From assembly GCA_964252035.1 (NCBI GenBank), contig CAXUOO010000048.1: 64,000 nucleotides of DNA; one strand, given 5' to 3'. The position numbers were made by a program, and so were the translations under genes. The DNA comes from Podarcis erhardii (lineage: Eukaryota). Shown in pieces: positions 13,121 to 64,000 of the stretch; within the stretch, counting starts at the first letter, position 1, and every line of letters starts with the position of its first letter. The notes under the pieces were generated by a model, which was given only the letters and a program-made list of their open reading frames with translations, was not told where the DNA came from and made no database searches.

Positions 13121-13165
<45 letters not shown>

Positions 13166-15152: not shown

Positions 15153-15189
<37 letters not shown>

Positions 15190-18200: not shown

Positions 18201-18749
18201 ATATCTGTTTGCCATGGCAGGGTAAACACTATCGGGGGAATTTTGAATATGATTGCTAGGTTGACTGCGATTACATTCTATCGTGATATAAGGTTTTGTT
18301 TGTAAGAGCTACAAAGAGTTCTGAACCTTGAAGACCAAGCTCTTGTGACCAAGCAATTGAGTAAATCTTTCAGGACATATCCATATTGTATAATCGTATA
18401 TAACGAACTGCATAGGTAGAAGAAAATCTGTTGAAACAGCAATCCATTTGATTGATTACAATCCAGTGCAATGCTCAACTCAGAGCTGTACCGCTGCACT
18501 TTGTTAAAAACCTGGGTAAATCATTTACAACAGCTGGCAGCTGCTAATATAGATTTTGAAAAGGAGGTGAATGAGGAGCTGAGGAGCAAGGCGTACGTTT
18601 ATGATAGTATAGCATCTGATGTTGAGACCGTTTTTATTTGTAACACAGTTGGCCGTAACGTATATCACCGCGCAGATCTGGCGTGACTGTGCTGGAACGC
18701 TGCTCTACAATTTCCGCTTTCACAAATTTGAATGGAAATCTGCATTACT

Positions 18750-30446: not shown

Positions 30447-33400
30447 ATGCTGGGAGACCGTGATAGTGGAGGAGGACTACCTTCTAGTCCTTTCTCCTCC
30501 AGCAGCACGTCTGACTGGCAATGTATCGACAGCGTGTGGTATCGCAAGCTACACGTTTACGATATGCTATGGGACAAGGAGCGATTACGATTTAAATTTT
30601 TTCTTGTTGCAGCAGCTCCTTTTGGTGGACCCATAGCTTGTGTGAGAAACGAGAAGGTATTTCAGCCCGCGCGGAAAAGTTTGAAGCCTGAACTGCAGGT
30701 GCGCTGCACTGTTCTGTGTCTCGGAAGATTCTGACTATCATGTCCGTGATCTAGGCTGTTATACTGTTTTTTTACTTGATTAGACAGCTAACGGTGTACT
30801 CTACATGGGTGACGAGCGCATTTGACTGCCTTTGCTCAGATATATACTGCACGCGGAAGGCTTATTGCCAAAACAGTCTGGACTTACAGTCGCCTCATAT
30901 GTATGGACTGGAACGCGGAAGAGGTACGCTTGACACTCAGTTGTATTCAGAGCTCACAGTAACTTTCCTAGAATGGTAGCTTTGAGTTTCCACAATGGAG
31001 TTTCTTCCCTAGCACAATGATTTTTCACAAACGTAGGTTCGACGCTGCAACGGCAACCAGTAGCGGATACTCCGAAGCAGCATAGGATGTGCTAATCTGA
31101 TATATATTTAGCTGAACAGTTCCAGTTGGAAGAAGTATGGTAATGAAACTGGGTTTGAGTTCAAAATTATAAGACTCTTGCTGCAATGTTTGCAATGACG
31201 TCTTCAAAATCCACACGTATCGCATAGGAGTTCTGTATTGCTTTGTCTTTCTTTCTGGCGTTCTCAGGTTTTAGTATGTGTTTTTCAAGATGGCGTTGTA
31301 AGAACATTTTCTCCACACTGCGAGAAGTTGCATTTTTTCCTGATGGATGAACGAATTAGAGTTGATGGCGGAATAATCCAAGCTTACATTGCTGACTGCG
31401 GTATCATCGCTGTCACTGCAGCGCTAAAAATTTACGTAAATCAAGCATTTGACTGCGCGCAAGTAATTCTCCTCCCTGAAGCTGGTAAAATATTCACGTC
31501 GAATGCAAGCACTACCGAGTTTTCTTATGAAAACACTACACGTTTTTTCCAAACCCGTTTAATACGTATATGCTGTAATGTGAAGGCATCATCATACAAT
31601 TTCAGTTTGATATATGTGGTTACATCCTAACTTGACCTCAACTAATTCCGCTCTGTTTTGATCTTGATAAATTTCCGATCTACTGCATGCGCAGGCCTGC
31701 GAGGACCTCCTTATTCACTTTGTCCTCTGCTCTCGCGCGGCCCTTCTTTTTTCACGATGAACAGCTTTACTTCAACGTCTTCATATGCAGTGAAACTCCC
31801 GGATCCGCGCTTACTAGTTGGATCGGAGAATGGTTCTTTGTTGCTAGTTGATAAGACGAGGTGTATCGACTTGGAGTACGTGCTGTACCAAATTGTCTTC
31901 TTTTGTTGCCTACTCGCCTTTACAGCGCAATTTGGTTTGTGGCTGATGCCGAGAGAGCTGTTTTGTGTTTCCACATATCACATTTCAAATTTTGTTCCCC
32001 GATGCGCATCTTTGTCTCGGCAACGGATGGAGAACCGAAAAAAAACTGGATGCTGTCAACGTTTGCGGCTTTTCGTTATATGTCTTTCCTTTCTGGAGAC
32101 CTGCACAACAATATGAACTATATATATATTCAGCTGGTATATTGCAATCTATATTGCATCCTATGCTTTTTTTTCCAGAGTGGGTGACGGACCGTACGCC
32201 GTTTTGTCTCTTTCCCGATCTGGACATTTGCTTGCCTGTTTGTCAACTGCAGGGTAAGCTGAGCTGCGGAAAACGAGAAGCAAATGTGGCTTCTTTCTCC
32301 TGAGTCCTCATTTTTACTCATGATAGCTTTGTATATTGTATAGTTAGTGGAAAGAGAATATAGGTGTGATATTACGGTGGGAAACACGCTGCTGTGTGTG
32401 TTTCTTGGTAGAATTCTGAAGGTTTTTTCTGCTGACTCTACACCTCGCTGCATTGTATCTCTTTGCTTGGAGAGGCAACGGCGCCCTAGGCAAGTGATGT
32501 GGTGCGGGGACGACTGCATAGCGTTGAATATACCTATGCGTACTCCCTCAGGAGACACTCAGGTTGGTTTTTTTCTGGCATTCTATCTGGCAGCTTGTTC
32601 AAAAGAACATTAGATTCGCGTGATCTGTGCACTGGCACTTTCAGCTTGTCATCTACAAATGTATGTGTGCTTGTAGGTATGTATGCTTATAGGTATTCGT
32701 ACGTACATCCACATATAGATACAGATTCATGTAGGTATTCTGTGCAAACGTACACTTGACCATCACATCTGCTTCATGATGCAAGTAGAGTATATTACTT
32801 CTAGATCTGGTTCTTCCGTTTGTGTAGTACTTTCCTAGATTGTGATTATTTTTTTTTTCGTTCGTGTAAATCGAGATTTAATAGGTATAGTTCATGATTC
32901 GGCGCTAAAATTCTTCTCTTACATTTAACCAGCACGTGCTCCTTCTAGGAGGTCCGAAAAATGAATGGCTCCCCTACCAGTACGGCAGTGAAAGCCACGG
33001 CAGCGACGGCATTTTCCTTGTACCTGAAGTGGATGGGTTAAGAATTTTGACTGCCACACAGACTGAATTTCTTCACCGTGTTGCACCTAGCACTGATGCA
33101 ATTTACGCGATCGGAAGTTGTGAACCAGCAGCTATGCTATGTTATGCCGTGGAGAAATTTAAAGGAGCTGACCCTGCTGCAGACGAAAGTTTGAGATCGA
33201 TCAAAGAAGATCTGGGTAAGAGCACAACGGCTTGTACCTCTTGAATAAAATGACAAACATATCTACTAGAGATATAGCGACATCATGAGATTGATTTTGT
33301 TGTTCCGTATTCATGCACGGTTGCTTGCTGGAGCTTCAAGCTGCAGGTATATCCGGCTGCGCATGTGGCATGAAAGCCCTCAAATCCTTTTCGCTGCCGC

Positions 33401-36400
33401 TATCCACTTAGTGTGAAGACGTGAAAGAAATATGTTTTTGATAATTTAATTGAACGTTACACACATTTGACTTGTAACAATACATGCACTAGACAGTGAT
33501 ATGTAACAAATATAGTACTTTTTACTGCAAGGACGAAAAATAATTTGATTGGTTCTTTTATGATGGATAGGCATTGTTGCGTTTCGTGATGTTTCAGCAG
33601 AAGTTAAGGCAAATAAAACTTTCATGCCCTTCCACTATTCAGCTGGCTTTCCGGTGGCATTTTTTCTTTTTTACTACGGGCATCACATCAAACACTATTT
33701 TCTTTGTAATGAATTTGTAATTTAGCGCTAGATTGTTTTCTACAGAATAGAGTGACTCTGGTTGTACTTTATTTTTTATCTCTGCAAGGAACTGCGACGG
33801 AGGTGTGCATTGATGCTTCTATATACGAATGGAAGTTTGAGCAAGCAGCGCTCCTGTTGCAAGCGGCTGCCTTTGGTCGTCAATTTCTCAATGAAGCAAA
33901 ACAACAAACGTGTCATCGATTTGTCCGGGCCTGTAGAGATCTGAGGTAAATGAGTGTCATGACGAGCTCGATCTGAAACGTAGTTTTTCATGCAGGTCCA
34001 GAGATCAGTGGGGCTTTAAGCCGACGATGCAATGAAAGTAAAGTAAGTATCGCTTTCACATCATTCCGCAGCGATGACGGCAGAGGCTGGCGCCATTTTA
34101 TTGTCACGCCTTGGCATCGGGTCTGTTGTTTTGCTTTTCTTCTAGAATATTATATGCTGTAAGACAGCGGCCGCTAGATATGGCATTGTCAGTTGCTCAG
34201 CTGCGCCACCTCACAATTTCTGCACTAGTCCGTCGGATTGCCAGGTGAGAAGATTTAACAATTAGGTAAGAGTTTCCTCATATGTGCAAACTCGATTTCA
34301 CCACTTGTTCTCTCGTGTGAACGAAAAGTGTACTACGACATATCCTCGCATGCGCCTGAGAGATTCATTCTCTGCAATTTAAAAGGAATGGTGTGCATGT
34401 ACACTTGTGTAATTCCACGCGCTTGCGCCCATATAGCAGTTTTCCTTACCTATATAAAGCTCCCTTATCAAATCAACGGCGCGCATCTCTTCATCCATAA
34501 GCAGGCAGATCGTTTCGTCTATATAATGTATTTGTGCATTCCGAAGATCAAGAAAGTGATGGCATTGCTTTGTTTCAGCAAGTTTTCGAGGTAGGCCGAT
34601 TTTGCGAATGCGTGTGAGTGGCACGTGAAAAGTATTGTCCTGTCATAACTTGGTATGAGTGTGTGTGCGTGTGTATTTGTGAGCGCTCCGGAAGTTTGAG
34701 AAGTATTTTCACTGTTTTGTCAAAGGTATCAAACGTAACTTGTAATTCATTGGGTATAGACTTGACGGCTTTTTTTTCCCTTTTTCGCAGTCGACGCGAA
34801 CACCTACTCGCATATCGCATATGTCAGTACGTGGGTTTGCCGCCTCACACCGTGCTTGCGTCGTGGGCTTTGGAGAAGATAACTCACAGCATAAGTCTGA
34901 CGGATGAGGAGCTTTCCAAAGTTGTTTGTCAGCGGCTCTTAGGCGTATCACACGGCATTTATGGGTCTCCACCGCAAGATGGCGTTTTGTCAGGGCCATC
35001 TGGGAAAGCTGCCGCTTTACCTTTTGCACGTGTGTGGCTTTGCGCTGCTCAAGCTGGCAGGCCTGTACTGGCCACACGTTTGGTAGAATTTGAAACACTT
35101 ACAAAGGTAAGCACTGACACGCGGAACGCGGATTTTTATACATTGTTGGAGTTTGAATATAGTGAGAATAGAGTAATGACGGAGGAAAGCGTGAGGGTCG
35201 AATCGTCACAGGAGAAGACGTGGCGGTTTATGAAAGTTGTGGAAGTAGAATCGCTAAAAAGGGAGGCGGCGGCGATTGAGAATCTAGCAGAAATTTGTTG
35301 ACATCGAAATGAGGCGCGTCCAAAGACAACGTGCGGACGCTAGCTTACGCGGACTAGTCAAGGATACTTATCGAATTGTACCTAGGAGATATCCAACGCA
35401 ATTGCGTCGTTTTGCAACACCGACATGGGGTGATTTCAAGACAAGGGTAAAGCGATTCTGGTGAATCTGCAACACTGGCAGCAGTGGAGGTGCAGTGTCT
35501 GAAGCAGTCACGCTCGATATTTATGAAATGTAGTGGACAGTTATTGTTCTTTGCAACATTGATGTGGGGAAGCGGCTAAGAATCATATCGTTTGACTGAG
35601 CGGTCGTACTGAAAGCAGGTGCTGTTCCCTGAGAAATACGTTTCTGTCTTCATTTACATTTGCTTAGACAGGTTACTTTGACAGTGCATACTGCACTTCC
35701 TGTGTTGTGTTAGTCCGCCGAGTCAATGTTGATAAGAGTTTCTTGCTTGGAGCGGTTTGAAAAGTTGTTATGTGCAAATGCGGTTTTCTCATTTCATTCT
35801 TGTGCTGCAACCGATTTCGCTTTTGGCAGACTTCCTTCCTTTCACATTCCTATCAAAACAGATACCCTCCGTATATGGCGCATGAAGTGACACTCCTCCT
35901 AGGTCTTGCTGTGTCAAATATCATCTTAAGACCTTAGTTTTTATATTCAGCGGTTATCCGCCCCTCATCAGGAGATTAAGGGACTTTGCCACATATGAAG
36001 GCTATTTATCTCGTTGGTTTGTGTGATCGTCAATCTTTCTGTCCACGCATAGTGCGTCTTCTATGTTCATTCTCTTATGGCTTTTTACTTAGGAGCAAGT
36101 ACGAATGCTTTTGAAATTGGCGGAACTTGATATCGCTACAGATAAAGCTGTCGCGTCAGGGAATTTTGATCTTATAATGGCTTGCATCTCAACTGCTCTT
36201 GCTCATGAGCATGGCGCACGAATCGGCGAGTGAGTTATTTTCTGTTAGCGCTCCTATGACAATAAGAAACGAAGAATGCGTAGATCGTGCCAGATATCTC
36301 GGTAGTTGCAGATGTGTATGCGTCAGACTGTTGCATCGATCTGCTTGACGTCAAAGTCTGTAATGTTGCTCTGAATTTGGTGTGCTATCCAGACCAGATT

Positions 36401-46000: not shown

Positions 46001-46777
46001 CCCTACTGGACTTTCTAACAAATTAGTAACTTAAAATTATCATTTCGTAACTCATTCTTTCCAGTTGTGTCCCTCCTCGATGAATTTGCAAATTCTTGCG
46101 TGTCAACTGTTTGCCAATAGATGCTGGTTCCCCCTTTGGCGTTCAGATGAATGTCTTCGACCTTTTTTTCTGAGTGGCATCGCCTGTAGGACTGGAAAAA
46201 AGCAACCTCGTCTTACCTACCTCTTTTGTCTTTCTCTCCCTGTACGTGTGTTCGCCTCTGCTCTAACTTTTGAATTCAACATTGAAGTCACTAGTTTCTC
46301 GCTTCGACAGCCCAGCGCGCTGGTTCCATAATATCTGCTGCTTCTGTACATCCCTATCTAGAGAATGAGCTTGTGCGTCTGTTTGATACCGCTTCGATAC
46401 CAGAGAAGCCGAATGCGTCCGCGAGAAGTGAAACTGATCGCTCAACGTGCGCAGGGAAGCCTTCACAACAAGCTCAAACCACAGCAAGTATCCTTAGTAA
46501 GCTCTGTACAAAAGCTGTCTTGCCTGCAGATACTCCATTGGGTATGGGCGCATTGTGAAGCCTGTGTCTGCGACTGCTGGAGACAGCACCTGCACTTTAT
46601 CAGATCATTCAAATTGCGTGTTAGCAAAGTGAACTTGACTGCAGATAATAATACAAGACACGCCTTTTATTTGTTACATGCTCTATAAATACGAGATTGG
46701 ATATGTGCTCAGCCGTACATGTATGTTGAATTTGGTTTGTCATGGCCCTTTGTGGAATTCCTAGTGGAGGCAGAACC

Positions 46778-49700
46778 ATGCTGGAAAAGCCATGGTAGTG
46801 CAGGCGGACTACATTCTTGTTTTTCTCCTCCAGCAGCACATTTGACTGACAATGTCTAGAAAGCGTGTGCTTGCGCAAGCCACGCGTGTACTATATGCTC
46901 TTCATAGCTGCTGCAGCTCCTTTCGGTGGTTCCCTAGCCGATGTGGGAAACGAAAAATATATGAGCCGACGTGGCAAAGTCGTAGTTTGAAATGGAGCTG
47001 TCCTTCACAGTTTATATTTTTGTGAACCCATAGCCTTTTTTACTTACAATAAAGTATTCAATCGGGCAGTATGATATAGTTTGAACTGTAGGTGTGCTGC
47101 AGTTGATGTTTTTCGATTATCGCATTCAATAGAAAAAGAGTACTATACATGGGTGGCGCGCTTATTAGACTGCTTGTGCTCAGATGTATACTGCTCAGGG
47201 ATGTTTATTCTCGAGACAGTCAACGCTTACAGTCTCGTACATATATGAGCTGGAACGTCGAGAAGGTATTTAACACTCAGTCATATTCATCGCTTAAGGT
47301 AACTTTTTCAGAATATAAACCCTGTGCTTGAACCGTGATGCCCCTTGCCTCACGCGAGAGCATTTCTCAAACGTCGCTTCCACAGGGCAACGGCAGCATT
47401 CCCATGGATCTGTATAAGCATGTGACAGTTCAGTGAAGTTTTAGTCGCACATTTCAAGGAGGAAGGAGACAGGCTCTTGCTAAAACTGGATTGGAAATAT
47501 AAAATCCACTTGACTCCTCAGCCGCATGCCGCATTGTTTGCAAAGAAACTAACCGATTTTTCATCTATTTGCATAACTCTGTCTCGTTGGGGCTCGCAGG
47601 TTTTGGTATGTTTTTCCATAACATAGCCTAGAAACATAGAAGTTAACGGCGGCGTATTTCAGGCGCACGTTGCTGACTGCGGCACCACCGCTCTCATATC
47701 AAGTCAAGGCATATGTAGATCAATCGTTTGACTGTGCGAATGTATGATGTACCGTAACAATTTTGGGACTGCCAGCGGCATCTCCTAAAAATTGATGTAT
47801 GTCTTTATAAGCTTACTTGACTGTAGTCTTCTCAGAATGTAGTATTATCTTGGTCTATCTGTCAAGGAGTTTTCTTCTGCCGCATTCGCAGGCGTGTGTT
47901 GATAGTCTTCTTGCTGCTATGGTCTCGCGCGGCCCTCCTTTCTCCACGTGGGTAAATAGCTTAACTTCGACAGAATTGACTGCAGTGAAAGTTCTGCATC
48001 CGCGCTCACTAATGCGGTCGGAAATGATACCTCGTTTATTGTTGATTAGGTACGCTGTCTCAGTATAGAGAGGAAGCTTCTTCACACAGTATATGTTACT
48101 TGTTGTCCGTCTGCCTGCACAACGGAAGCCGGTATGTTTTATCACTGCAAAATTCAGTGAATGTTGCACGTTGGATTTTTACTTATATAGAGTTCCTCTT
48201 CCTTTCAAACGGATGAAGAATTCGAATTACTTGGTGGTTCAAGCGTTTGCGACGCTCTGTTTTGTCTCTCTCACTCCGGAGTTGTTCGCTTGAAAATGAG
48301 CAGGTATGTATTTTATTTGCTGTTTAGCTAGTACAACTCGATACAAATATACATATACAAATTGCAACACGTGTCTCTGCAAAAGTGAAAGACGGGCCGT
48401 ACATCGCTTTGTCTCTTCTTCGATTTGGACGCTTGCCTACTTGTCTGTCGACTAGGGGGTAAGGTGAAATGCCAAAACTATCAAGCATAGTCGCGTGTTT
48501 CTCCTTAGTTCTCGTGAACTTCCCCAAAAACAGCTCTTCTTGTGGTGAGTTTTCCTGCTGGCCCTAAGCTGCTGTTTGTGTTTGTCCACAGATCCGGCAG
48601 GCGAGTTTGGAAGACTTTACTCCTTGCTGCAGTGAATTTCTTCGTTTAGAGACGTAACAGCGCACTAAGCGAGTGATGCTGTGCGGCGAGGCGATGATGG
48701 CCTAGCTTTAACTGTTCCCATGTACACTCCTTCGATGAACATTGAAGTTGCATTTTTTGGCAGTCTATCTAAAAAGATGCTCTTTCTAATTTGGCGAAAA
48801 GAAGCGTGTCTGAACACCCATCTTATTTGCATCAATCGAGACTCCCACTTTGTGATCATAAAGTATAACGGCGTGTGCGTTTGACTTTTCACATACAGAT
48901 GTGTATGCAATTGAGTATTTGCACATATGTGTGTATGTATGTATAGATCCCTGTATGTATTTCGAGCAAGTACACTTGACGAACCTGTTTCACGATATGA
49001 GAAGCTCAATGCTCTTTCATTTTCAGGTGGAGATGAGTTGTTTTTTGAAAGATCCATAGAAAGGGGGGGGCATTTGAAGGCGGTGGTCTTCGCTGAAATT
49101 CGATAAAAAAAGTGTATAGTTTCCTGGTAGTGAGTTGGAATATTTATACCTTAACGCACGCAGCACGTGCTGCTCCAAGAAGGCTCAAAAAACAAATAAC
49201 TTTCCTACCAGGAGGTGGCAGTGTAAAAATCGGCAACGGCTTCTTATCCTAAAGTGGATGACCTAAAAATTTATGCATCTAAAACAAAATTCTCTCACCG
49301 AGTGGACCAAGGCGATGAGGCAATCTAGCCAATTGGAAGTTTTGAGCGACAGCTTTGCTATTCTATGCCATGGACAAATTCGAAGGAACTGCCTCTGCTG
49401 CAAATGAAGGTTCAATAAAATCAGGGATAAGCTCGGTAAAGAGCACGCCGCCGAATTTCGCTTGAATAAAAGAGAAAAGTATGCCACCTACAATTATAGA
49501 TATAGGAGCAGAATAATTTGAATGGTATGCTGAACTTTTCCCCAAGCTGCACAATTCATTCATGGCGATCCAAAGTGCAATTCTTTCTCAGCTGCAATCG
49601 TGGTGGCATCAGACCCTGTCCGCTGGCGCGTTCTTTAGTGTGATTAGACTTGAACAAACAGAAAAATATTTTTCTCAAATGAGTCATACTGCTGCGGCAG

Positions 49701-52605
49701 CATATGTATGTAGATAATTAACCTGTATAGTTTGCCTTTGCTGCAGAAATAAGAATATCAAAATGGTGGAGCACTGTATGAAGAAGCGCCAGTGCTTTCC
49801 TGATGTTTCAGATTAAGTTTACGCAGGGTGAAACTTGCCCTCACTGGGTGTTGCTGGCCATCCATTTTGCATTCTTTTCTTTTTTCTACAGGAGATCACA
49901 TCATACATTTTCTTAACGAGAATGATTCTATGTTTTGTCCTTGACTACTTTTTTTTTGCATTTTAAATGTAAATTTCTTTATTTGTGCATGAAACTGCGA
50001 CAGAGATGTGCGTTGCTGCTGCTACATGCGACTAGACGTTCGAGCAAGCTGCGCTCCTGTTGCAAGCGGCAGTCATTGGTCGTCAACTCCTTGTGTAAAC
50101 AAAACAAAAAATCTGCCATTCGTGTGTGTGGCCCTGTAGAGACTTGATATAAACGCTTGGCATGACGAGCTCGGCGTGAGACGTAGCGGCTATTGCCAGC
50201 AATACAATAAAATAAGTTTATTTTTTCCGTTTCAGCGTTACCCGGGGACGAGGACAGAATCTGAGGCACTTTTTCATTGTCAACCCACATCAGCCTCTTC
50301 GTTTTTTAACTTTCTTTCAGAATTTGCAACGCTATCAAACAGCATTGACAACTTATGGCAATGTTAGCTGCTTGACTGCGCCACTCACGATTTTTGCATC
50401 AATTCGTCGGCATGCCAAGTGAAAAACTAGAACTTGTGTTGTCGGTATTGCACATGTGCAAGATTATTTTGTGCCAGATGTTCTTTCGCGTGGACAAGGA
50501 CGTAATAAGACGTATTGCTGCGTGCGCATGTAAGATTTATTCTCTGCAATGACGAAAGAATGGTGCTTATGTAGACTTTGCAGTGACAGGCGAATGCCAT
50601 CATAAACCCGTTTTACATATATATGTCTTATTTCTCTCTACAGAGCTCCACTGCCAATTACTGGTCGGTATTCCTTCATCTTTATTATGTTAGATCCATT
50701 CACTCTGACTAGTGTGTGTGCGCGCTCCGAAAGACAAAAAAATGTCGATTGCCATGTCGTTATGTACCGCAAGATATGAAAAGGTATTGCGAATGCCTGC
50801 ACGTGTTAAATCGAACTACGCTGTGTGTCAAAGCTGTGTTTAGCTGTGTATGCTTGTATATGTCTGTGCGAGCAGACTTCGTAAATCTACAGGCGGCGGC
50901 TATTTTTTTAGCTCTCAAAGTGGCGCCAACTCCTACTTGCATATCGCTCATGTCAGTACGTGGTTTGCGGCCTCATACCTGAGTGCTTCGTAGGCGCGGT
51001 AGAAGACAACTCACTGCATAAGTCTGACTGATGAGGAATTTTCCATACTAACTTGGCAGCATCTCGAGCATATTGCACGGCATCCTTCGCTCTGCCAGGG
51101 CCATCTGCAAAAGCTGCCGCTTTATCTTTTGCTCGCGTGTGCCTCTGCGTTGCAGACGCTGGCAGGCCTGTATTCGCCACATTTGGATACCGTGTGAACA
51201 CTGACAAAGGTAAGCATTGAAACACACAACACGCATTCCTATTCATTTGTAAATACTGAATACGGTGAGGATGACTGATGACGGAAGAGGGTGTGAGGGT
51301 CGAATCGTCAGAGAGGTGGCGTGGAGTTTACACGAATTGTGAAAATAACATCTTTTCGTAGGGAAGTGATGGCGACTGGGAAACTGGCTTTGTAATCAGC
51401 CGCGGACAACAATAGCGTGCTGACGGTAGAAACGTTCACGCGGACTAGTTATTGAGTAGTTATTAAACGTAACGGAAACACACGCACCGGAGAGCTCTGG
51501 AATGCCGACACTGGAAAGGTGTTTCAAGACAAGAGTGGACCGGAACTGGTGAATTTGCAACACTGACGGCACGGGAGGTGCAATGTATGAAGCATTCACG
51601 CTTTAGAGATATATTTAATAGAGTGAACAGTTGTTTTTGCAACATCGACATAGGGAAAGTGGCGGAGAATTACATTGTTTGACACATTGATTGTTCTGAA
51701 ATGAGGTGCGAGTACTGGGTCTTGTGAGGAGGCCAAGACTGACGATTCCGCTCGCAGCGTTTCGGGGGTTTACTTTGCGCAGACGAGATTTCTGCATCTC
51801 AGTTTCCGTGCTGCTGTCTTTCGCCACCGTCCTCGATATTGGCAGGCTTCCTTTTTTCTACAATCCTATTAAAACAGGTCCCCTCCCTTTATACTGCATG
51901 AAGCAACCCTCTTCCGCAGAGCGTCAAGCTTTTCTTTTCAGCGTAGGTACTTCTTACATCCGAAATTGACGTATTGTAGCTAAGGACTTCCACTGTCGTA
52001 TATATGATCATTCGGCTACCTATTCTATGTGAAAGCCAATATTTTGGTCACGCGGGCAGATGGGCGCCCCTTGTTATTCTTTGCTCTTACCTACTCTTTT
52101 CTCAGTACCAAGTACGAATGCTTTAAAACTAGCAAGACTTATTATCGCCACAGATATAGCTGTCGCCTCAGGCAATTTCGACAGTATAGTTGCCTGCGCC
52201 TCTACTGCATTTTCTCATCCACAATGCGCATGAAGCGGTGGGAGCGTTGTTCTCAATATGGTTGCTCATACTGCAAAGAGGAAAAAAATTTCTATAGTTT
52301 ACGCAAAGTATGTCGGAATTGGCAGATGTATCGTCAGACTGTTGAACTGATGTATATGAAGCTGAAATTGTTTAAACTGGTCCCAACCTGTTGTGTAAAC
52401 CAGATCATCTGACTCTCGTAAAACGAATACTAAGTAAGCAACCTGTAACGCCCTTTCATTCTGATCCGTATGCAAAAGAAAAACAACCCGAATGTACAAA
52501 GAATTTTAGATAGTGATGCTGCAAGACAGCATTGGTGGTATACCTTAGGTTTTGTACAGTTCGTCTTTCACACTGTGTATAATACACAGAGGTGAGCGTT
52601 TGAAC

Positions 52606-53800: not shown

Positions 53801-54339
53801 GCGCAAATCGTGTCTGCATACATCAAATCAATGCTGCTGGTAGCCTTATGAAAACAAAATTGTTCTTTGGAGCTCACTTGCTGTTTTTCTGCAGCTCGTT
53901 TTCCGGGTTGCTGCTGATGTGAAGTATATAAGTCAAGCTAGCGTGCCTATAACAAATGTAAACGACCCAGTGATTACAAGGCAAGGTGATTACTCCGTAT
54001 GGACTGTATATATGTGTTACGCAGCCTCTGGTTGAAATATAATCCATCATTTAGTTGAGCCTTACCGTTCGTCACCTGTAAAAGTTCAACAGTTCAAAGG
54101 TTCACTATAGAGAAGGATGGGGCTTCCACGTGATACAATGATTTTCATATGGGCTGTAATTCTAATTCCACCGAAATTCAAACATAAGGGAATGGCTTTG
54201 ATAATGGGAACGTGCTGGACGGTTCTTAGACTGAGATTTGGCTTCGAATCCGCGCTTTGCACTTAAGATCAGGCACCTATAGCGCCCAATATGAACAGCC
54301 GCTCTTTGACAGAAAAAATAAGGAAATACGCACAAAACT

Positions 54340-57300
54340 TTTATACAAGAGAATGCTGTGCTCACAAACGCCTCAATGTAAGCGGTTGAACGGTTCTTCG
54401 CAAATCGCATACTGACTTTTATGTCATGCTATCTAGTTCCTTTTTCAGCTATCACTCTCAAGTTCCGAAACGCAGACTACTAGATATTTCATTTGACATT
54501 CGAAATCCTGATCAATCGAGATCCCTTGTTCATCTGACTTCCACTGCAGACTGATTATTGAAGGTTGAACCATGCTCTGCAAATCGTGACCTTGCTTCCA
54601 TATGACAACACTGTATCTTTCTTGTCGCAGGCTAACTTTGGTGTATCACCAGACAACAACTTTACATGGGGGCGCAGATATCAAGAACGTATTTGATAAT
54701 TCACCTTCCGATACTTTTGCTTCAACTGCACGTCCTGCACTGCAGCTGAAGCTCCTTCACATTGTATATTTTAAGTCAGAATTAAGACTTTTGCGCAAAT
54801 TCACACAGTCTAGTTGAATCACGCACTGCTTCATGAGTCGCTCACGATGCAGTGGAGAACGTGCCGCTTGAGGTAGAGTACAAGCAGGATTTCTGTCGAC
54901 AGATAAACACGATCTGGTGATTGATTTTCCCAAGCCTCTCTATTAAATACGAGCTTTCATATAATTCAACTATTCAACTGTAAAAGCAAGCCTTGACACT
55001 TCTTTTCTGCACACACACACAGACACGACAGACATCGGGCACGTGCTGCAGCGGTCGCACTTTTTCATTATACGGCGTCAGCCGTGCATTCTGCAACGAA
55101 AATTAGTTAACGTGGAACAATATATTACCCCTTCTGCTTACAGCTGTGTTTTCAAATAAGGAAACCCAGTAGCTGAGATATGCACAACTGTGATCAATGT
55201 AGGCTTCCATGGAATACAATAGAGTTGCTTTCGTGCGAGCGCTTCTAATGGCAGCTGCGCGATCTTTGAAAAATCTCTTACTGTGTAGAAGCTGCTGCAC
55301 GGCTCATGTCCTAGAGATCTGGTTTTAGCCACATGCGCTGCACTGGATTTAAAATGCCGCAAGACAAAATATTATTAATACTGTCTAAGGCTGTGCTCAG
55401 ATGTAAACACAGTCTTATTTCCCAATCATGCAATATTATATAGATGCTGAAAATATTGTTATATAATTTCTGCAGCTTTCAATGCGAGCATCTGAAACCG
55501 TTATCATCCAAAAATTTACACAAATCTTCGACATCTGGATCTGCTGCACGGCTCACATTCCAATAAGTCTATTCTGGTATATACTGAGCCTACTAATAAT
55601 GCACGAGTAACCATATGACAAAAGCGAATTTTCAACCGCTCGGTCATCAATGTTTCTGCTATATACATTTACGGTTGCATGCTATGAACTCTATCAAGCT
55701 TCCATGCGGGTCTCTCTAAATATGTATCGTGCAACACTTCAAAGAATCCCCAGAGTTTGACTGTATGCTGCGCGACATACTCTCTGAAAAAAAATTCATT
55801 CGATTTCCAATCCTGCAATGCCGTAATGCTTGTAAAAGCAGGTTGTTTGTCAGAGATTGTGCTGCCATAAAAGGCCTGGTTTCGTTGCAATGCGATCCGT
55901 TCAACTGCTGCTGTGCAACCATTCGTAGTCGATGCGATGTTCGAAAATGTTTTGCACGCTGACCGTTCAAATACATACTTTCGGCCGCGCAGAGTGCAAG
56001 GGAGTTGATGCGATTTGATGAGAAGTACTTAGTTCATTCTAATACTGTGATCAATACTAGAAACATTCAAGTAGTCGAACCATACAATGCTATAAATTTT
56101 TTGGGGTTCCATGTAACCATATTTAGTTCTTAATGCGATCCTTTGAAGTAAGGCTGTGCAACGCTTTATAGATCCTGCGATGTCGAAAAGGTGATCCACG
56201 TTCACATTTTAAACATATAAATTCGATCGCGCAGGATGCAGTAGATCTTATTCGGCTTTCTGAGAAGTACTCTCAAGTACTCTCATTTTCTTAAAATTCT
56301 ATTCACTTGTAAAAACGTACAACCGATCATATTCTGTACTGCAATAATAAGTTTGGCATCCAAGTAGCACAGCATATCTAGTTTTCAGTACGACAAATTG
56401 CAGCTCTGTTGGGCAAGCCTTCAACTATACAGCGAAACTCAGAATGCGCTGCGCGGGTGACTACCTGAAAATATAATTTTGGCCGCGCAGGGGCGCAAAA
56501 GCAGGATGTGCGGCTTGAGAGGAATTCCCCCTCCATCAAACACAATCAAGAAATCGAAACGTGTATGTCAATGTAGCCTGCACTGCGAGCTTCTGCATTT
56601 ACTGCTGTGCAACCCTCCATAGATTCTGCGATACTAGAAAAATTTACGCTCATCTTCTGAAAGTATACATTCGGCCGCGCAGCCTGCAATGGATTTTATG
56701 CGGCATGATGGGTAGAACATTCAGTTTTTTCAAGTGTTGTTCTCACTTGGAAAACACGTATAATTAGTCACGCCACGCATTGCGGTAGAAATTCGTTCCT
56801 TCACGTGAAGCAGTAGATCTGGTTTGCAAAGCGACATTTAACAACTTCTATTGTGCAATCCTTCATACATATGGCAAAATCCAAAACCGCGCTGCACGAC
56901 TCACCATCTAAATATATACACTTGATCTCACAGTCTGCATTACATGTAACGGACTTTATGGAGAAAGGTTTTCCTACATATAGGTTTGACCGACATATCT
57001 CAGCTATTAAATGAAACACGCAATTATATAGGAAATGCTACTTTTTGTGATCTACAAGTGACATAGCTTTCTCCGCGAGTTTATACGACTGTTACTGTGC
57101 TAGGCTTTAAAGCTACCGTGAACAAGGAAAACTGAGTGCACGGCTCACTTCCTAGGATCTGGACGCAATCTTGCATCCTGCAGTAAAGGTCATCCGGCTT
57201 GAATAAACGTATCCAACTTCATTCTTATGCTGCTTTCCCTTGTCAAAACAATCAAATTCTCAAATCCTGTCCTGTAATGATATTACTGCCTTCTATACAC

Positions 57301-60300
57301 AACAGCATATCTTGTTTTCAGTTCGACATTCTGCACGTCCTGTTGTGCTATCCTACATAGAATTCCAAAAATGTGCAACACGGCGTTGAGTAAATATACT
57401 CGACCGCGCACTCTGCAATAGAGACAATGCAGCTTGAAAAAACTACTATAATTTTATTAAAATGCTGTGCTCACTTGTAAAAATAATTCAGTAGTCAAAC
57501 CATGCACTGCTACAACACATCTGGCTTTACCGTATGAAGATACATCTAATCTTCTGCTGCTTTCCAACCCTTCATTAATTCTGCAAAATCCAAAGGCATG
57601 CAAGGCGGCTCACGCTCTGGAAAGTATATTTGACGGTGCAGCCTGCAATGCAGGTTATGCGGATTGGAAAAATACTGCAGTCTTATTTAAATGTTGTGCT
57701 CACCTGTAAACATAATTAGTTTTCAAAGCATGCACTGGTAGACAACTGCTGCCTTCCGTGTAAGACAGTTTATCTAGTTTGCAATGCGACTTTTGAAAAC
57801 TGCTGCTGTGCAGCTCCTCATTAATACTGAAATCTGGGACAATGAGCTCTACGGCTCACTTCCTAAATGTAGAATTTTGATCGCGTATCTTGGAATGGAA
57901 GTAATGCGTTTGGTAGAAGGATAATATTATTTTTTTCTAGTGCTTTGCTCACTTTTGAACAGAATCCACTGGTCAAAATGCACTGCTCTTTTCTAAGTCC
58001 CTTGTACCACAGTATATTTAGTTTGAAATTCGATTCTTTAAAATCGCTGCTTCGCAGACCTTCATGAAAAAAGCGCAATGCACGTATGTGCTGCAAGTCT
58101 CACGCTCAACCTGTATTCAAGGGAATGCGGTCCGAAGACAAATACGCTCTTCTAGTCTTATGCTGTGCTCACTTTATTTGTAATTACAATCCAATTAGTC
58201 AACTCATGCGCTGTTACAGACATTCTGGTTCCACGTAACGTAAAATATGTAGTCTGAAATGCAAACCCTAAATCTGCTGCTGTGCACCCTTTCCTAGATA
58301 GCCCGAAGTCATAAATTTGCTGCACGTCTCAATTCCATATATGCATTCTACTGCACATCCTGCAAATGTTGCGTTCACGTGTAAGCACAATCGATCACTC
58401 AATCTATGTTGGTATATAAATGCTGGCTTCTAGGAAAGGCAATCTATCTACTTTGTTATAATAGTGTTGGAAATGCCGTTATGCGATTTCTCAAAGGTAA
58501 TGAAAAATATGAACCTGTGCTACAGGACCCACACTCTAAGGATATACATTCGACAGCGCAGGCTGCACTACCTGTAAAGCTCCCTAGAAAAACATCAAGT
58601 GTCGCTTTATTGTAATGCTGAGATTTCAAACAAACACAAGCTACGGACTGAATCACCTACTGATGTAACTTATGTTGTTTCCAATGAACAGAAAGCTACT
58701 TGTTTCTCAGAGTGAGTTTATAAGATGTTGTCGTTGCAACGCTTCACGATTTACCAAAGCTGGGCCACCTGCGGCATGGCGATTGCGCAGCCTGCAATGG
58801 AGGAAATGCAATGTTTGGAAAAAATTATACTTTTTCGGAATACTGTGCTCATTTGGGAAAACACCATAACGTTGTCAAACCTTGCACTGCCATAGAAAGT
58901 GTGGAATTCCATGTGACAAAATATATGCTAACTAGCAATGCGAGTCTTTGAGATGGCTGCTTTGCAATCCTTCATGGATACTTTGCAATGTTCGAGACGT
59001 CCTGCACGACTTACAAGCTGTAAAAAGTCCCACCCAATCCCCTTAATGGAGGCAACGGTAAGTGAAGAGAAATAAGGCTTCATCAGTCTAGTTTGCAAGC
59101 CGCTATAATTGCTACTCTGCAACATTTTATAGATTCTACGGAAGTCCAATACTTGCAATGCGGCTCGCTTTAAAAAAACGTTTGTTCGACCGCGCAGTCT
59201 GCAACTCAGATACTTCGGCTTAAAGTAAAATATTGCATGGGTCAAACCATTCACTGGTGTAAAAATTCTGGCTTCCATGTCAGACAGAAGATGTTGATTG
59301 CAATGTGAGTCTTGAGATTGCTGCTGTGCAGTTCCCCGTAGATAATGCAATGTTCGAACATGTGGTGCATTACTCACTTGCTGAAGATATACAATCGATC
59401 GCGCAGACTGCACTACGTGTAAAGCGCCCTTAAAAAAAAAACTCAACTGCCCCTCTAATCTAATGCTAAAAGTACAAACAAACACAAACTACCGGATGAA
59501 TCACGTACTGATGTAACAAGTGCTAAAATCCGCGATCCACAAGCTACAGAGCTTTCAACGCGAGTTTATAAGCTGTTATTACTATGCAAAGCTGCACGAT
59601 CTAACAATATGGGCCGCTTGCGGCACCGCAGAGTTTCTGAAGACATGATTTCGATTGCACAGACTGTAATGGAAGAAATGCAACTTTTTGCCTAAAGTCG
59701 TATTTTTTCGATTGTTGTGCTCACTTGAAAACACTAGCAGGTAGCGAAACCATGACTGGTATTGCATTTCGGCTTCCAGGTGACTGAAGGTTAGCTAGTA
59801 TGGAATGCGAGCCTCCGAAACGGCTGCTATGCAAACCTTCACAGATACTCAGAGATGTTTGAAAACTTGCAGCAAGACTCACAAGCTGAAAATTTATCTT
59901 TAACGGCGCAGCCCGCAATTGAGATAATGCGGAGAGGTAAAAGATACTTTTATGGTCTATGATGCTGTATGCACGTTTATAGTCAATCTCGTGGTAAAAT
60001 TATGCACTGCTATACTATTGCTGGCTTCTATGTAGCACAATACTCTACTTTTCACTTTAGGTTGCTGCTGTGCAGCCCTTCAGATTTACTAGAATGCTTG
60101 CTGCATGCCTCCCTATCTGAGCAGATAAGTTTGATTTCCTAGCCTGGAATGATGATTATTCAGCCGAACATATGGAAGTTTTACTTTAGTAAAGTGATGT
60201 GTGAACACACGATTTCCTGCTTAAATCATGCACTGCTATAGAACGTTTGCTTCAATACAACACAGACAGTCTACTTTGCAGTAAGAATCTTCATAGTTGT

Positions 60301-63300
60301 CGCTCTTCAAATTTCCGGAAGTACTGCGGAATTGTTCGGCGTGGCTCACCACCTGAACATATTTCTTAATGTAAAAACCGTCAAGCACAAACAAACCTTC
60401 GAGCGCTACGCTTTTGTGGCTCTCGTATAACACAGTATAACTAGCCTGCAGCGCGAGCGTTTGAGAGTCCTGCTGTGCAACGCTGTGTAGGTCTGAATTT
60501 TTTGAAAATGGGCTGCACGACTCACAAGCTTTCATTCAATCGAGCGGCCTGCAGCGAAGGTAATGCGGCCAGCAGAAAATCATTTTTGCTTAATTCGAAT
60601 GCTGCCTTCTGTTATAAACACATCCTATTGGTCACATCACACACTGCTCTAAAGCGTCTGGCTTCATAAAACTTCATATATCAGGTCTGCAGTGCGACCC
60701 TTCAAAACTGCTGCTGTGAAAAAAACCGCTTCACTAACATCGCAACATCCGGAAACGTAATGCAAGACTCACGTCCTAAATATATAATGTCGACTGAAAA
60801 TATTGCAATTGAGCGAATGCGGCCTGAGGAATAGTACTGCTTCTTTTTTTGAATGCTGTGTATGCGTGTGAAAAGGTCAGGTACTTACTTCAAGCGCTGC
60901 TATAATAATTCTGGCTTTCATGTAACACATTATGGTTTCGAATGCGAGTTTCGAACTCTGTTGTGCAACCTTTCATAGCTACTAATATGCTCGGAATTGT
61001 GCAGCACGCCTTTTTGTTTTTGGTTTTGAAGGCGCACCCTGTCATGGACCGAATGCGACCACAAGAATAATCCTTCGCCTTTATCCCAGTGCTGTGTTTC
61101 CGTGTAAAAGCATACAAGTAGTCGTAATAAAAAGTTTGCCTTCCATAACACTCAATACAGTCAATCTGGTGGCCTCGGAAAATGGTGCTGTGCGACACTT
61201 TCTATATACTGAATGTTTGAGCACGTGCTGCATGGCTCACCGGCTAAGGATGTGCATTCGACGGCGCCGCCCGAAAGGCAAAAAATTCTGCATTAAAGGA
61301 AACTCCTATACTTTCTTCGAATGTTGTATTCATTAGTTTGAAAAGGTAAATATTTAGATTTTCAGGTGTTATAAAACTTCTTAATTTAAGATTGGAAATC
61401 TAGTCTGCAACGGGGGGTCCTGTGCTATTGCTGCTGTGTATTCGTGTAGATGTACTGCGAAGGTCGAAAATGAGTTTGCACGGCTCACCGTCTAAAAACC
61501 AAATTTTCGACCACGCAGCCTAGACTAACGCACTGCACAGGCAAACATTTTTTTATTACGTTGATGCCGTATTTGAGAACAAACATACACTTATATGTGA
61601 GATCCTTACTGATACGTCATATGCCATTTTCAGAGTAGTAAGAGGTATACTTTTTCAAAATGAGCAATTACAATTCGTGCTCTGCAGCACTTCAAAGACA
61701 CCGCGAATATCGCACACATGCTGCAACGTCTCAGGTTCTGGAATGACAATTCGAACGCACAACCCGGAATGAAAATACTGCGGCGTGAAGAATACTTTTA
61801 CATCCTTTCACTGCTGTGGTTGCTTGAAAAACAATCGAGTACGCAAACCTTGCACTGCTATGGATTCCACTTCATACAGTATGCCCAGTACGAAACTGTA
61901 AACTGACGCTATGAAACACTTCATAGGTGATACAAAGTTCGGAAATGCGCTGCACGCTTCACTTCCTAAAACCATACATTCAGCCGCCCAGCTTGCAGTA
62001 CGTGTAATGCGCTGTAGGAAAAACATACGAATTTTATGCATGCAAACAACTGAGTGAAACACAGACTGATGAATCAAATGCGATTTCTTATAAAAGAAGA
62101 AGAGTTAGTTTCCAACTCAAGCCTAAGCGGTAGGTGTGCAAACCATCACACTTACCGCAAAATCGCACACCTTCTGCACAACTCACTTCTCAAATATATA
62201 ACCTCGTTCGTGCGGTCTGAAGCGGTGAAAATGCGTTTTACAAAACGACACTTCTTTGGTATTTTAATGCTATGTATACTTGTGTGTAGCAGCCTGCAAT
62301 TGAAATAATGCAACTTGAAACGATAAACACCAATGTCAATTCACTGCTCTGTTCTCCCGTAACCAAGACCAAATGTCAAACCATGCGCTGCGATAGAAAG
62401 TGTGGCTTCCATGTAACATGTTGTGTCTAGTTTGCAACGCGAGCTTCTAGAAATAACGGCTGGCTGCTCTTTGGAAATAGTGGGATGGTCGAAGTAGGTT
62501 TCAAGCTCACCTCCTAGAATCACACATTCGGCCGCGCAGCCTGCAATGAAGGCAATGTGGCTTGAAGGGAAGCTTCCCTACTTTATGGAAATGCTATGTA
62601 CACATGTAAACACGGTTACATAATCAAAGCTTGTCCTGCGATAAAACTCGTTGCCTCCGTGTAATCGATTCTACTTAGTCTGCGTGAATCTGGAAATGGC
62701 TGCTGGGCAACCGTTCACGGATACTGCCGAATTTGAAAATATGCTGCAAGGCTCACTTTCTGGAATTATACATTCGACCGCGCGCGCAGCCTGCACTAAG
62801 TGTGTCACCTCGTTAGAATTAATAATATGTCTTTGTCTCTTCCTGTGTTTGAGAACACAAAACAGAGGTAAATTGAAACAGAAAAACTTAGGTTAGATGC
62901 TACCTTTCATCAACTACTAGCTACATGAAATTCAGCACGAGTTTACACAATCTACGTCGCGCAACGCTGCACATAAACCGAGAACGGCAAAGATCTCCTA
63001 CCCAGCTCACAAGATGGTGATATAGTCTCGATCTCCCGGCCTACAATGAAAGGAATGCGGGACCGAAATATTTCTACTTTGTTTTAATGCTGTATTCAGT
63101 TGCACCATGCATTGATATAGAGATGGGGGCTTTCATCAACTATGTTATATCCAGTCTGCAATGCGAAACTTTTTATGCTGCTATGCACCCACACTAGATA
63201 TTCCAAAGATTAAAATTGTGCTGTTCTGCTTACTGTCTGCGTATACTCGCTCGATGGTGCAGGCTGCAATGAGTATAAGGCTCCGTAGAGATAACTACAT

Positions 63301-64000
63301 ATTCTTCAATCGAATGCACTGTCTGCAAACAAGCAAAATGTAGTATAGAAATCTAATGATATATCAAGTGTCAATTACCATAATTACAACGCATATACTG
63401 TCTAGCTTGCTCCTATAGAATATTTGTTGTGCAACACGTCATATATACCGCGAATATCAAAAAGAAATCTGCAGCGCTCACTTCCTGGAATCGTTATGAC
63501 GACCAGGGAGTCTTGAGGAAAAATATGCGGCCTTACGAGAAATCCTCTTAGTCTTTCTCACAATCTCAGTACTTCTCCGGAACAGACAAATAGTCGATTC
63601 CGGCACTCTGCTAATTTCTCTGGTTTTCGTGAAGCATACGATTTCTAGATTGCAATACGAGTTTCTGAGGTTGCTGTTGTGCAATCCTTTTAAGATTAGA
63701 TTGACATTGTGCTTCCTGGCTCACTTTCTAATGTTTATACAGCTGATTTTGCAGCCTGGAAACGAGGTAAAGCAACTTCAGAAGAAGTGTTCTCTACGTT
63801 ACTTCAATGGTGTGTGCACTCCTAGAAACAAATTAGTGATTAAATCACGCATTGTCATACAAATTCTGCCTTTCAAATTACTATACACTATAGAATGTGC
63901 AATATGCGTTTTTGACTTTGATGCTGTGCTGCCCTTCACGGATATCTTGCAATGTCCGAAAACGCGCTGCACGGCCTACAAGCTGAAACGGTAAATTCAA
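54340..64000. repeat. Degenerate ~240-bp tandem array (~38-40 units, continues past the window end)
   Basis: The anchor GCTGCACGGCTCAC or a variant recurs at ~55294, 55543, 55953, 56196, 56448, 56891, 57137, 57371, 57599, 57849, 58090, 58319, 60511, 60761, 61228, 61476, 61718, 61949, 62741, 63468, 63710 and 63965, mostly 225-255 bp apart. Other blocks recur in fixed order: CGACCGCGCAGCCTGCAAT, GAGGTAATGCGGCTTG, ATGCTGTGCTCACTTG, ATGCACTGC, CTGGCTTCCATGTAAC, TCTAGTTTGCAATGCG, CTGCTGTGCA. Confidence 0.9.

What the first reader, a model, noticed from the sequence alone, without database searches (positions are those of the whole stretch)
54340..64000. Large, highly diverged ~240-bp tandem array with block-wise conservation
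About 38-40 head-to-tail units cover at least 9.6 kb. By-eye consensus: GCTGCACGGCTCACTTCCTAAAATATACATTCGACCGCGCAGCCTGCAATGGAGGTAATGCGGCTTGAAAAATACT..TTTTT..AAATGCTGTGCTCACTTGTAAACACAATTAGTAGTCAAACCATGCACTGCTATAGAC..TCTGGCTTCCATGTAACA.AATATATCTAGTTTGCAATGCGACCTTT.GAAACTGCTGCTGTGCAACCCTTCATAGATACTGCGAAGTTCGAAAATGT. Units are too diverged to look like a homogenised satellite, yet period and 8-16-nt GC-rich blocks (about five TGCA cores per unit) persist while spacers drift. I do not recognise it as a described element. Candidate roles (all inference): ancient centromeric or subtelomeric satellite, cluster of structured ncRNA genes, array of DNA-binding-protein sites (TGCATGCA is a known over-represented motif in coccidian genomes), or a fossil gene built of tandem exon-intron repeats.
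Basis: partly seen in the sequence, partly recalled or inferred. Interest (0 to 1): 0.8.

Follow-up and report, generated by a model that had tools for sequence, protein, structure and literature searches.

The report
Old decayed 246-bp satellite array
The window really does end in about 40 head-to-tail copies of a 246-bp non-coding unit, but it is best read as a very old satellite array of a lizard-borne coccidian parasite that stopped being homogenised and has decayed almost neutrally, so it is an ordinary kind of element rather than a new one.

Summary
The array is real. An iterated profile finds about 43 same-strand units (modal period 246 bp) from ~54.2/54.66 kb to the window end, plus a second 8-unit array at 18.7-20.5 kb. 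Units share only ~50% pairwise identity, the tree is 92% terminal branches (~0.37 substitutions/site per unit), and Tandem Repeats Finder misses it.

The "block-wise conservation" holds only weakly. Rate variation among columns is real but mild (gamma alpha 7.4, against 18-999 in uniform-rate simulations). It is not organised into blocks longer than simulations give. Its clearest part, slow decay of GCA/TGC words, also appears in unrelated old duplicated DNA in the same window, so it is not specific to the array.

There is no coding signal, consensus RNA structure, Rfam match, sub-repeat or enrichment of the full TGCATGCA motif. Differences between parasite isolates (about 1.1%) do not avoid the conserved columns.

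Flanking genes (a DDI1 exon closest to Toxoplasma Ddi1, VPS16 and a VPS16 pseudogene) place the window in a coccidian genome.

The closest described thing is the heterogeneous subtelomeric sat240/sat350 DNA of Toxoplasma gondii; homology could not be tested.

This scan had already noted ~240-bp-monomer satellites elsewhere in this genome.

The parts
54657..64000 (+). Array B, main body: about 40 head-to-tail units of the 246-bp family, running off the window end. The best-preserved units lie at 55.9-58.0 and 59.8-61.0 kb, and the left edge (54.66-55.9 kb) is more degenerate.
   Evidence: nhmmer profile hits with E down to 1e-45, and a lag peak at 246.
54205..54436 (+). Very degenerate remnants of units at the left edge of array B.
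   Evidence: Weak nhmmer hits at 54205-54279 (E 6.5e-6 and 0.0065 with the two profiles) and at 54346-54436 (E 0.7).
18756..20481 (+). Array A: 8 units of the same family in the same orientation. It lies between the two copies of an old segmental duplication.
   Evidence: nhmmer E from 1e-21 to 1e-41. Identity between A and B units (0.504) equals that within each array (0.507 and 0.503). No multi-unit match to array B in register.
58495..59892 (+). The only internal higher-order event: an old duplication of about 3.5 units, 58495-59024 matching 59340-59892 at a shift of 845 bp.
   Evidence: blastn gives 67.5% identity over 560 bp. Unit pairs 58476/59321 and 58729/59579 are each other's best partners.
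46770..52254 (+). Flank: a decayed copy (pseudogene) of the VPS16 gene, about 2.4 kb upstream of the first clear unit of array B (54657).
   Evidence: 66-80% DNA identity to 30439-36242. There are in-frame stops where the other copy has open exons.
30439..36242 (+). Context: an apparently intact VPS16 gene, the parent or paralogue of the pseudogene.
   Evidence: Pfam Vps16_N hits for the exons at 30447-30734 (E 2.5e-9) and 32936-33244 (E 1.2e-18).
12446..18496 (+). Context: the left copy of the second old duplication. Its partner is 21355-28632, and array A lies between the two copies.
   Evidence: blastn patches at 64-74% identity and tblastx.
9054..9563 (+). Context: the DDI1 retropepsin-domain exon, which marks the window as coccidian rather than host.
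   Evidence: Pfam Asp_protease E 1.6e-46. The best solved relative is 7D66 (E 6e-53), ahead of human DDI2. 7D66 is the Toxoplasma Ddi1 protease domain (PMC9168383).

Best explanation
This is a relic satellite array. A ~246-bp non-coding monomer was amplified into homogeneous tandem arrays, by unequal crossing-over or a similar process, in the genome of a coccidian parasite that was co-assembled with a wall lizard. Homogenisation then stopped. Every unit has since drifted on its own by about 0.37 substitutions per site plus small indels. The period survives only because the indels are short.

The slightly better-kept GC-rich words are mostly CTG/TGC/GCT/GCA words, the class that decays most slowly in all old DNA of this window. 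They reflect a genome-wide sequence-context bias rather than a job done by the array.

Shown:
- the anatomy of the array
- the star-like deep genealogy
- the absence of coding and RNA-structure signals
- the mild rate heterogeneity
- the same word bias outside the array

Inferred:
- the mode of amplification
- that the array now sits as gene-poor, probably heterochromatic filler, by analogy with the sat240/sat350 subtelomeric satellites of Toxoplasma gondii. Those are heterogeneous, their subtelomeric regions are enriched in H3K9me3, and sat350 gives rise to small RNAs.
For: - Periodicity and units.
- Divergence: mean pairwise identity 0.50, with no difference between arrays A and B and no dependence on distance.
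- Maximum-likelihood tree: 92% terminal branch length, total length 16-17 over 43 tips, which is about 0.37 substitutions/site per unit.
- Rate variation: gamma alpha is 7.4, so it is mild. Autocorrelation of conservation is not above the neutral simulations.
- Word bias outside the array: GCA/TGC is the best-retained trinucleotide in both non-array duplicate pairs (0.60 against 0.39 overall), followed by AGC/GCT and CAG/CTG.
- Isolate differences: 26 differences fall on columns of average or higher conservation (0.698 against 0.66).
- No coding signal.
- No consensus RNA structure, and no Rfam or tRNA match.
- No sub-repeat within the unit.
- No terminal inverted repeats around either array.
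- Neighbourhood: old duplications and a VPS16 pseudogene.
- Same locus in other samples: it is seen at about 1.1% divergence in runs of another host label from three other studies.
- Literature: T. gondii subtelomeres carry a 240-bp and a 350-bp satellite with heterogeneous monomers (PMC9498087). Sat350 is heterochromatic and yields small RNAs (PMC2877743).
Against: - Column heterogeneity is significantly above the uniform-decay simulations (z about 5-7). CAG-class words plus local indel load explain only R2 = 0.12 of it, so some weak constraint is not excluded.
- With 26 differences, the isolate test has little power.
- Chromosomal position, chromatin state and transcription are all untested. 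No RNA run is on record among the holders.
- Genome-wide copy number and the link to the younger ~240-bp-monomer satellites noted elsewhere in this genome rest on indirect evidence. That evidence is a high-depth pile-up of other contigs over 57455-57511 and unchecked earlier notes.
Confidence: 0.72

Rival explanations
1. The array is a functional platform of short DNA-binding sites, for example for an ApiAP2-type factor or a centromere or heterochromatin protein that recognises TGCA/CTGC-type words. Selection keeps the words while the spacers drift.
For: - TGCA columns are conserved at 0.78 against 0.61-0.68 in simulations.
- TGCA is 4x over mononucleotide expectation in the arrays, against 2x in the rest of the window.
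- Residual column heterogeneity is unexplained.
- Column conservation correlates between array A and array B (r = 0.32).
Against: - The same words decay most slowly in unrelated duplicated DNA.
- Rate variation is mild: alpha is 7.4, and TGCA columns evolve at about 0.75x the mean rate.
- There is no block-scale autocorrelation.
- Isolate differences are not depleted at conserved columns.
- The full TGCATGCA motif occurs only twice.
Confidence: 0.1
2. The arrays are the internal tandem region of a transposable element, or derive from one, rather than being a free-standing satellite.
For: - There are two separate arrays 34 kb apart in one orientation.
- Other contigs at high summed depth share only a ~55-nt piece (57455-57511) and then diverge.
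Against: - No terminal inverted repeats flank either array.
- There are no transposase or reverse-transcriptase ORFs next to them.
- There are no dispersed single units elsewhere in the window.
- Array B is at least 9.4 kb, which is long for an array carried by a transposable element.
Confidence: 0.07
3. The array is a cluster of small structured RNA genes, one per unit.
For: All units are on one strand with a regular period.
Against: - No Rfam match even at E <= 1, and no tRNA.
- RNAalifold gives zero consensus pairs on both strands, and the unit folding z-score is -0.4.
- Divergence runs across the whole unit.
Confidence: 0.03
4. The array is the fossil of a protein-coding tandem repeat or of an exon-intron repeat gene. 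The period of 246 equals 82 codons.
For: - The period is a multiple of three.
- There is one 185-aa open frame at 58928-59485 on the minus strand. It is longer than 98% of Markov shuffles.
Against: - There are stops in all six frames of the consensus.
- Column conservation has no 3-base periodicity.
- Control DNA of the same window has equally long or longer open frames.
- The ORF has no Pfam family.
Confidence: 0.02
5. The array is an assembly artefact or host (lizard) DNA wrongly joined to parasite sequence.
For: Depth is low in all runs (about 2 in X1).
Against: - X1 contigs tile 56000-61999 with no differences.
- Independent studies hold pieces at about 99% identity.
- Array A, of the same family, lies between coccidian-type genes.
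Confidence: 0.03

Closest known systems
Toxoplasma gondii sat240, a subtelomeric 240-bp satellite (Contreras et al. 2022, PMC9498087)
   Same: - It is a coccidian genome with a monomer of about 240 bp.
- Arrays are a few kb long and lie between genes.
- The repeats are reported as not having high identities.
- They are associated with dynamic, duplication-prone, gene-poor regions.
   Different: - Sequence homology could not be tested, because no sat240 sequence is available in these tools.
- A subtelomeric position is not shown here; the window has no telomere repeat.
- Array B is longer than the blocks used as examples in the paper (0.6-2.4 kb).
Toxoplasma/Neospora Sat350 (ABGTg/TGR) family
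   Same: - It is a heterogeneous coccidian satellite with highly variable monomers.
- It is heterochromatic and a source of low-level small RNAs (PMC2877743; PMC9498087).
   Different: - Its monomer is 350 bp.
- It has more than 800 copies per genome and is still dynamic in copy number.
- Here the array shows no recent turnover, and neither chromatin nor RNA is tested.
Old diverged monomeric layers that flank homogeneous higher-order-repeat cores of primate alpha satellite
   Same: - The units are degenerate, no longer homogenised and in one orientation.
- Identity falls towards the array edge.
- Earlier notes of this scan describe a young ~240-bp-monomer higher-order core elsewhere in this genome.
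   Different: - No adjacent homogeneous core is visible in the window.
- A centromeric role is untested.
- Divergence here (50% pairwise) is far greater than in primate monomeric layers; that comparison is from my own knowledge.

Membership tests
Satellite DNA (non-coding tandem array) | Head-to-tail units of constant period on one strand over kilobases | tested here: met
   About 43 + 8 units, all on the + strand, with a modal spacing of 246 bp.
Satellite DNA (non-coding tandem array) | No coding capacity and no structured RNA | tested here: met
Satellite DNA (non-coding tandem array) | Concerted evolution or homogenisation of neighbouring units | tested here: not met
   The tree is star-like with 92% terminal length. 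Identity is 0.50 at every unit distance. There is only one old 845-bp internal duplication. Hence 'relic' satellite.
Satellite DNA (non-coding tandem array) | Many copies at several loci of the genome | tested here: inconclusive
   There are two arrays in the window. Other contigs pile up over 57455-57511 at summed depths of 198, 62, 21 and 60.
T. gondii sat240 | Monomer of about 240 bp with heterogeneous copies | tested here: met
   Modal 246 bp, 50% pairwise identity. The family description comes from PMC9498087.
T. gondii sat240 | Sequence similarity to the sat240 blocks of ME49 chromosomes Ia, III, V, X and XII | not testable with these tools
   No T. gondii genomic DNA or sat240 sequence is held. 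The paper's supplements contain none.
T. gondii sat240 | Location within subtelomeres | tested here: inconclusive
   There is no (TTTAGGG)n in the window. The array runs off the window end, and the contig beyond could not be fetched.
Centromeric higher-order-repeat satellite | Higher-order periodicity, with multimers far more alike than neighbouring monomers | tested here: not met
   Identity does not rise at any unit lag (0.49-0.525). The only long self-match is 67.5% identical.
Centromeric higher-order-repeat satellite | CenH3 occupancy | not testable with these tools
   No ChIP data are available.
ncRNA gene cluster | Conserved secondary structure or a match to a known family | tested here: not met
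TGCATGCA cis-element array | Enrichment and conservation of the full 8-mer | tested here: not met
   There are 2 copies in 9.4 kb of array B and 0 in array A. Only the TGCA/TGC/GCA sub-words are kept, as elsewhere in the window.
Coding tandem repeat or fossil gene | An open frame in the consensus, or 3-base periodicity of conservation | tested here: not met

The most novel reading that the evidence does not exclude
The slow decay of GCA/TGC (CAG-class) words, seen in the array and in all old paralogous DNA of the window, could reflect a genome-wide sequence-specific process in this coccidian. That process might be a pervasive DNA-binding or chromatin factor, or a repair bias. The 246-bp arrays would then be dense, still-used platforms for it, for example in heterochromatin nucleation or chromosome-end organisation, and the residual unexplained column heterogeneity would be real constraint.
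Probability: 0.07. Interest if true: 0.6.

Novelty: new member of a known kind. Interest (0 to 1): 0.22.

Why it matters
This is a clean example of what a satellite looks like long after homogenisation stops, at about 0.37 substitutions per site per unit. It sits in an uncharacterised lizard coccidian whose genome was only co-assembled with its host. It gives an internal neutral yardstick for that genome. It also parallels the unusually heterogeneous subtelomeric satellites reported in Toxoplasma.

The more useful by-product is the control result. GCA/TGC words are the slowest-decaying trinucleotides in old duplicated DNA, so 'conserved GC-rich blocks' in this genome should not be read as function without a context-aware null model.

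Tried and rejected
- Tandem Repeats Finder at score 30 found no ~240-bp array, because the units are too diverged.
- Rfam gave nothing at gathering score over the whole window or at E <= 1 over 55.9-60.3 kb. ARAGORN found nothing.
- RNAalifold on 43 aligned units gave 0 pairs on both strands.
- Coding tests were negative: six-frame stops, 3-periodicity and ORF length against shuffles and control DNA. Pfam found nothing on the 185-aa ORF.
- A sub-repeat of about 41 bp within the unit was tested and rejected. Autocorrelation peaks at 0.12, below the 0.21 permutation limit.
- Array A is not a copy of part of array B; there is no multi-unit match in register.
- No terminal inverted repeats lie around the arrays.
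- The profile finds no dispersed units elsewhere in the window, even with filters off.
- Two exact-pattern scans of metagenome contigs with paired conserved blocks gave 0 hits. These patterns match only 0-2 of the ~50 units in the window itself, so the blank means little.
- The look-up of encoding contigs with the array ORF and the DDI1 exon found nothing on record, so I could not extend beyond 64000.
- A full-text search for conserved 12-14-mers found only unrelated primers.
- The search of earlier findings by sequence was blank.
- The sat240 sequence was sought in PMC9498087 and its supplements and is not held there.
- The search for homologous proteins was not used. Its length window would exclude full-length DDI1 and VPS16, and the parasite's identity was not decisive.
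Full report
**Observation**

Tandem Repeats Finder reports no array with a period near 240 bp anywhere in 50000-64000. A 7-mer lag spectrum of 54340-64000 nevertheless has one dominant peak at 246 bp, 80 counts against a mean of 12.5 and sd of 7.5.

I seeded an iterated nhmmer profile with 55895-56145. It converges on 51 hits, all on the + strand.
- 43 hits run from weak remnants at 54205-54279, through clear units from 54657, to 63999, where the array runs off the window.
- 8 hits form a second array at 18756-20481.

Start-to-start spacing is mostly 224-258 bp, with a mode of 246.

**Divergence and genealogy**

I aligned 43 full-length units, 7 from array A and 36 from array B.
- The consensus base is held by 66% of units on average.
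- Mean pairwise identity is 0.50, with a range of 0.36-0.69.
- Identity does not depend on distance within the array: it is 0.49-0.525 at lags of 1-12 units.
- Identity is the same between arrays A and B (0.504) as within them (0.507 and 0.503).
- In the IQ-TREE tree, 92% of the length is in terminal branches. Total length is 16-17 over 43 tips, about 0.37 substitutions per site per unit.
- The only higher-order event is an old duplication of about 3.5 units, 58495-59024 against 59340-59892, at 67.5% identity.
- Array A does not match any part of array B in register over more than one unit.

This is the signature of a single old amplification followed by independent decay, with no concerted evolution since.

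**Is conservation block-wise?**

I simulated 43 independent descendants of the consensus. The simulation used the observed base-specific substitution matrix, uniform rates across columns and indels tuned to the observed length spread. Each replicate went through the same MAFFT and trimming pipeline (100 replicates each, and 80).

The two calibrated runs bracket the observed mean conservation (0.606 and 0.680, against 0.660 observed). Their tree lengths of 15.6-17.7 match the real one.

| Measure | Observed | Simulated |
|---|---|---|
| Column sd | 0.127 | 0.090-0.102 |
| Split-half correlation of column conservation | 0.51 | 0.19-0.25 |
| Conservation of TGCA columns | 0.78 | 0.61-0.68 |
| Gamma alpha | 7.4 | 18-999 (8 simulated alignments) |

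No replicate reaches the observed value for the first three rows. The gamma model improves lnL by 40 units. Rate heterogeneity is therefore real.

It is mild, however. The coefficient of variation of rates is about 0.37, and TGCA columns evolve at about 0.75x the mean rate. The autocorrelation of conservation at lags 1-3 is no higher than in the simulations (z < 1). The variation sits at the scale of single columns or 3-4-nt words, not 8-16-nt blocks.

**The key control**

The best-kept words in the unit are GCA, CTG, TGC, TGCA, TGCT and GCTG. These are CAG/CTG-class words.

The window also holds two old non-array segmental duplications: 12446-18496 against 21355-28632, and 30439-36242 against 46770-52254. 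Across 3.8 kb of their alignments, at 70% identity, GCA/TGC is again the best-retained trinucleotide. It scores 0.60 against 0.39 overall, independently in both pairs. AGC/GCT and CAG/CTG come next. Same-composition permutations (CGA, GAC, ACG) sit at 0.35-0.43.

TGCA and GCTGCA are also over-represented 2-4x in the non-array DNA. The persistence of these words is therefore a property of this genome segment, not of the array.

CAG-type words are known to be the dominant simple repeat in Eimeria genomes (PMC4199364). Any link to that is my inference.

Word class plus local indel load explains only 12% of the variance in column conservation, so part of the mild heterogeneity remains unexplained.

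**Present-day constraint**

The array is held almost completely (97% of sampled words) by one run, probably the source sample. It is held in pieces by runs labelled with another organism from three other studies.

Laid on 56000-61999, the source run tiles the stretch with no differences. The other runs give short contigs with 34 differences in 3107 bases (1.1%), plus a 10-bp and a 12-bp indel polymorphism.

The 26 listed differences fall on columns with a mean conservation of 0.698, against 0.66 for all columns. They are not depleted at the conserved columns. With 26 differences, the power of this test is low.

**Other readings tested**

- Coding: there are 11-12 stops per three consensus units in every frame, no 3-base periodicity, and the longest open frames are no longer than in control DNA.
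- RNA: there is no Rfam family at gathering score or at E <= 1, no tRNA, zero consensus pairs by RNAalifold on either strand, and a unit folding z-score of -0.4.
- Sub-repeats within the unit: none.
- TGCATGCA: two copies in array B and none in array A.
- Transposon features: no flanking inverted repeats, and no dispersed single units in the window.

**Context and organism**

The window is coccidian, not lizard.
- The exon at 9054-9563 encodes a DDI1 retropepsin domain. Its best solved relative is 7D66 (E 6e-53), ahead of human DDI2. 7D66 is the Toxoplasma Ddi1 protease domain (PMC9168383).
- 30439-36242 carries VPS16 exons (Pfam Vps16_N).
- Its duplicate at 46770-52254 has in-frame stops in the matching exons and is a pseudogene. 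The first clear unit of array B (54657) lies about 2.4 kb downstream of it.
- Array A lies exactly between the two copies of the other old duplication. This agrees with the scan's separate note s1-229735.
- There are no telomere repeats in the window.

The neighbourhood, with old duplications, a pseudogene and decayed arrays, looks like a slowly turning-over, gene-poor region. Whether it lies next to a telomere or a centromere cannot be told from the window.

**Comparison with what is known**

Toxoplasma gondii subtelomeres carry satellite blocks of a 350-bp family and of a 240-bp family (sat240).
- The authors stress that the repeats lack high identity and that sat350 monomers are highly variable.
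- Genes lie between the blocks, and synteny is low where satellites are present (PMC9498087).
- Sat350 carries silent chromatin marks and yields low-abundance small RNAs (PMC2877743).

The present array has the same kind of monomer length, heterogeneity and setting. I could not test sequence homology, because no sat240 sequence is available to the tools. Membership therefore stays open.

Earlier notes of this scan (s1-263147, s1-263164) describe a layered satellite and a 2.4-kb higher-order unit made of ~240-bp monomers on other pieces of the same genome. This scan has thus met the family, or a relative of it, before. I could not compare the sequences. The only indirect support is a pile-up of other contigs (summed depths of 198, 62, 21 and 60 in the four runs) that match only 57455-57511 at about 85%.

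**Verdict**

- The array is real.
- The 'block-wise conservation' is a mild, word-level effect largely shared with non-array DNA.
- The best reading is a relic, no-longer-homogenised satellite of a coccidian parasite: a new member of a known kind.
- Interest is low to moderate. The genome-wide slow decay of GCA/TGC words is the most useful lead to follow.

Noticed in passing
window 30439-36242 and 46770-52254: An old same-strand segmental duplication at 66-80% identity. The left copy carries open VPS16 exons (Pfam Vps16_N). The right copy has in-frame stops in the matching exons, so it is a VPS16 pseudogene.
   Followed up: partly
window 12446-18496 and 21355-28632: A second old duplication, with patches at 64-74% identity. 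Array A (18756-20481) lies exactly between the two copies. No array is seen outside the pair, so simple array-mediated unequal crossing-over is not obviously the cause. The gene content of this block was not identified.
   Followed up: partly
non-array duplicate alignments and arrays: GCA/TGC is the slowest-decaying trinucleotide in all old paralogous DNA of the window (retention 0.60 against 0.39 overall). AGC/GCT and CAG/CTG come next, and same-composition permutations do not share the effect. This points to a genome-wide context bias, or to pervasive use of these words.
   Followed up: partly
window 57455-57511: In all four runs laid, other contigs with a high summed depth (198, 62, 21 and 60) match only this ~55-nt piece of one unit at about 85%, and then continue with unrelated but mutually similar sequence. 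They may be a more abundant related repeat in the parasite or the host.
   Followed up: no
window 56265 and 61126: Indel polymorphisms between isolates. One copy of the 10-bp tandem AAGTACTCTC is missing in runs X2 and X5, and run X2 has a 12-bp insertion behind 61126.
   Followed up: no
window 9054-9563: An uninterrupted 169-aa exon encodes a DDI1 retropepsin domain. It is closest to the Toxoplasma Ddi1 structure 7D66, which is useful as a taxonomic marker for the co-assembled parasite.
   Followed up: partly
window 42381-42638; 7838-7931; 11503-11648; 52607-52712: Small young tandem repeats that are unrelated to the 246-bp family: 128 bp x2 (93%), 49 bp x1.9 (97%), 78 bp x1.9 (92%) and a (TA)54 microsatellite about 2 kb upstream of array B.
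   Followed up: no
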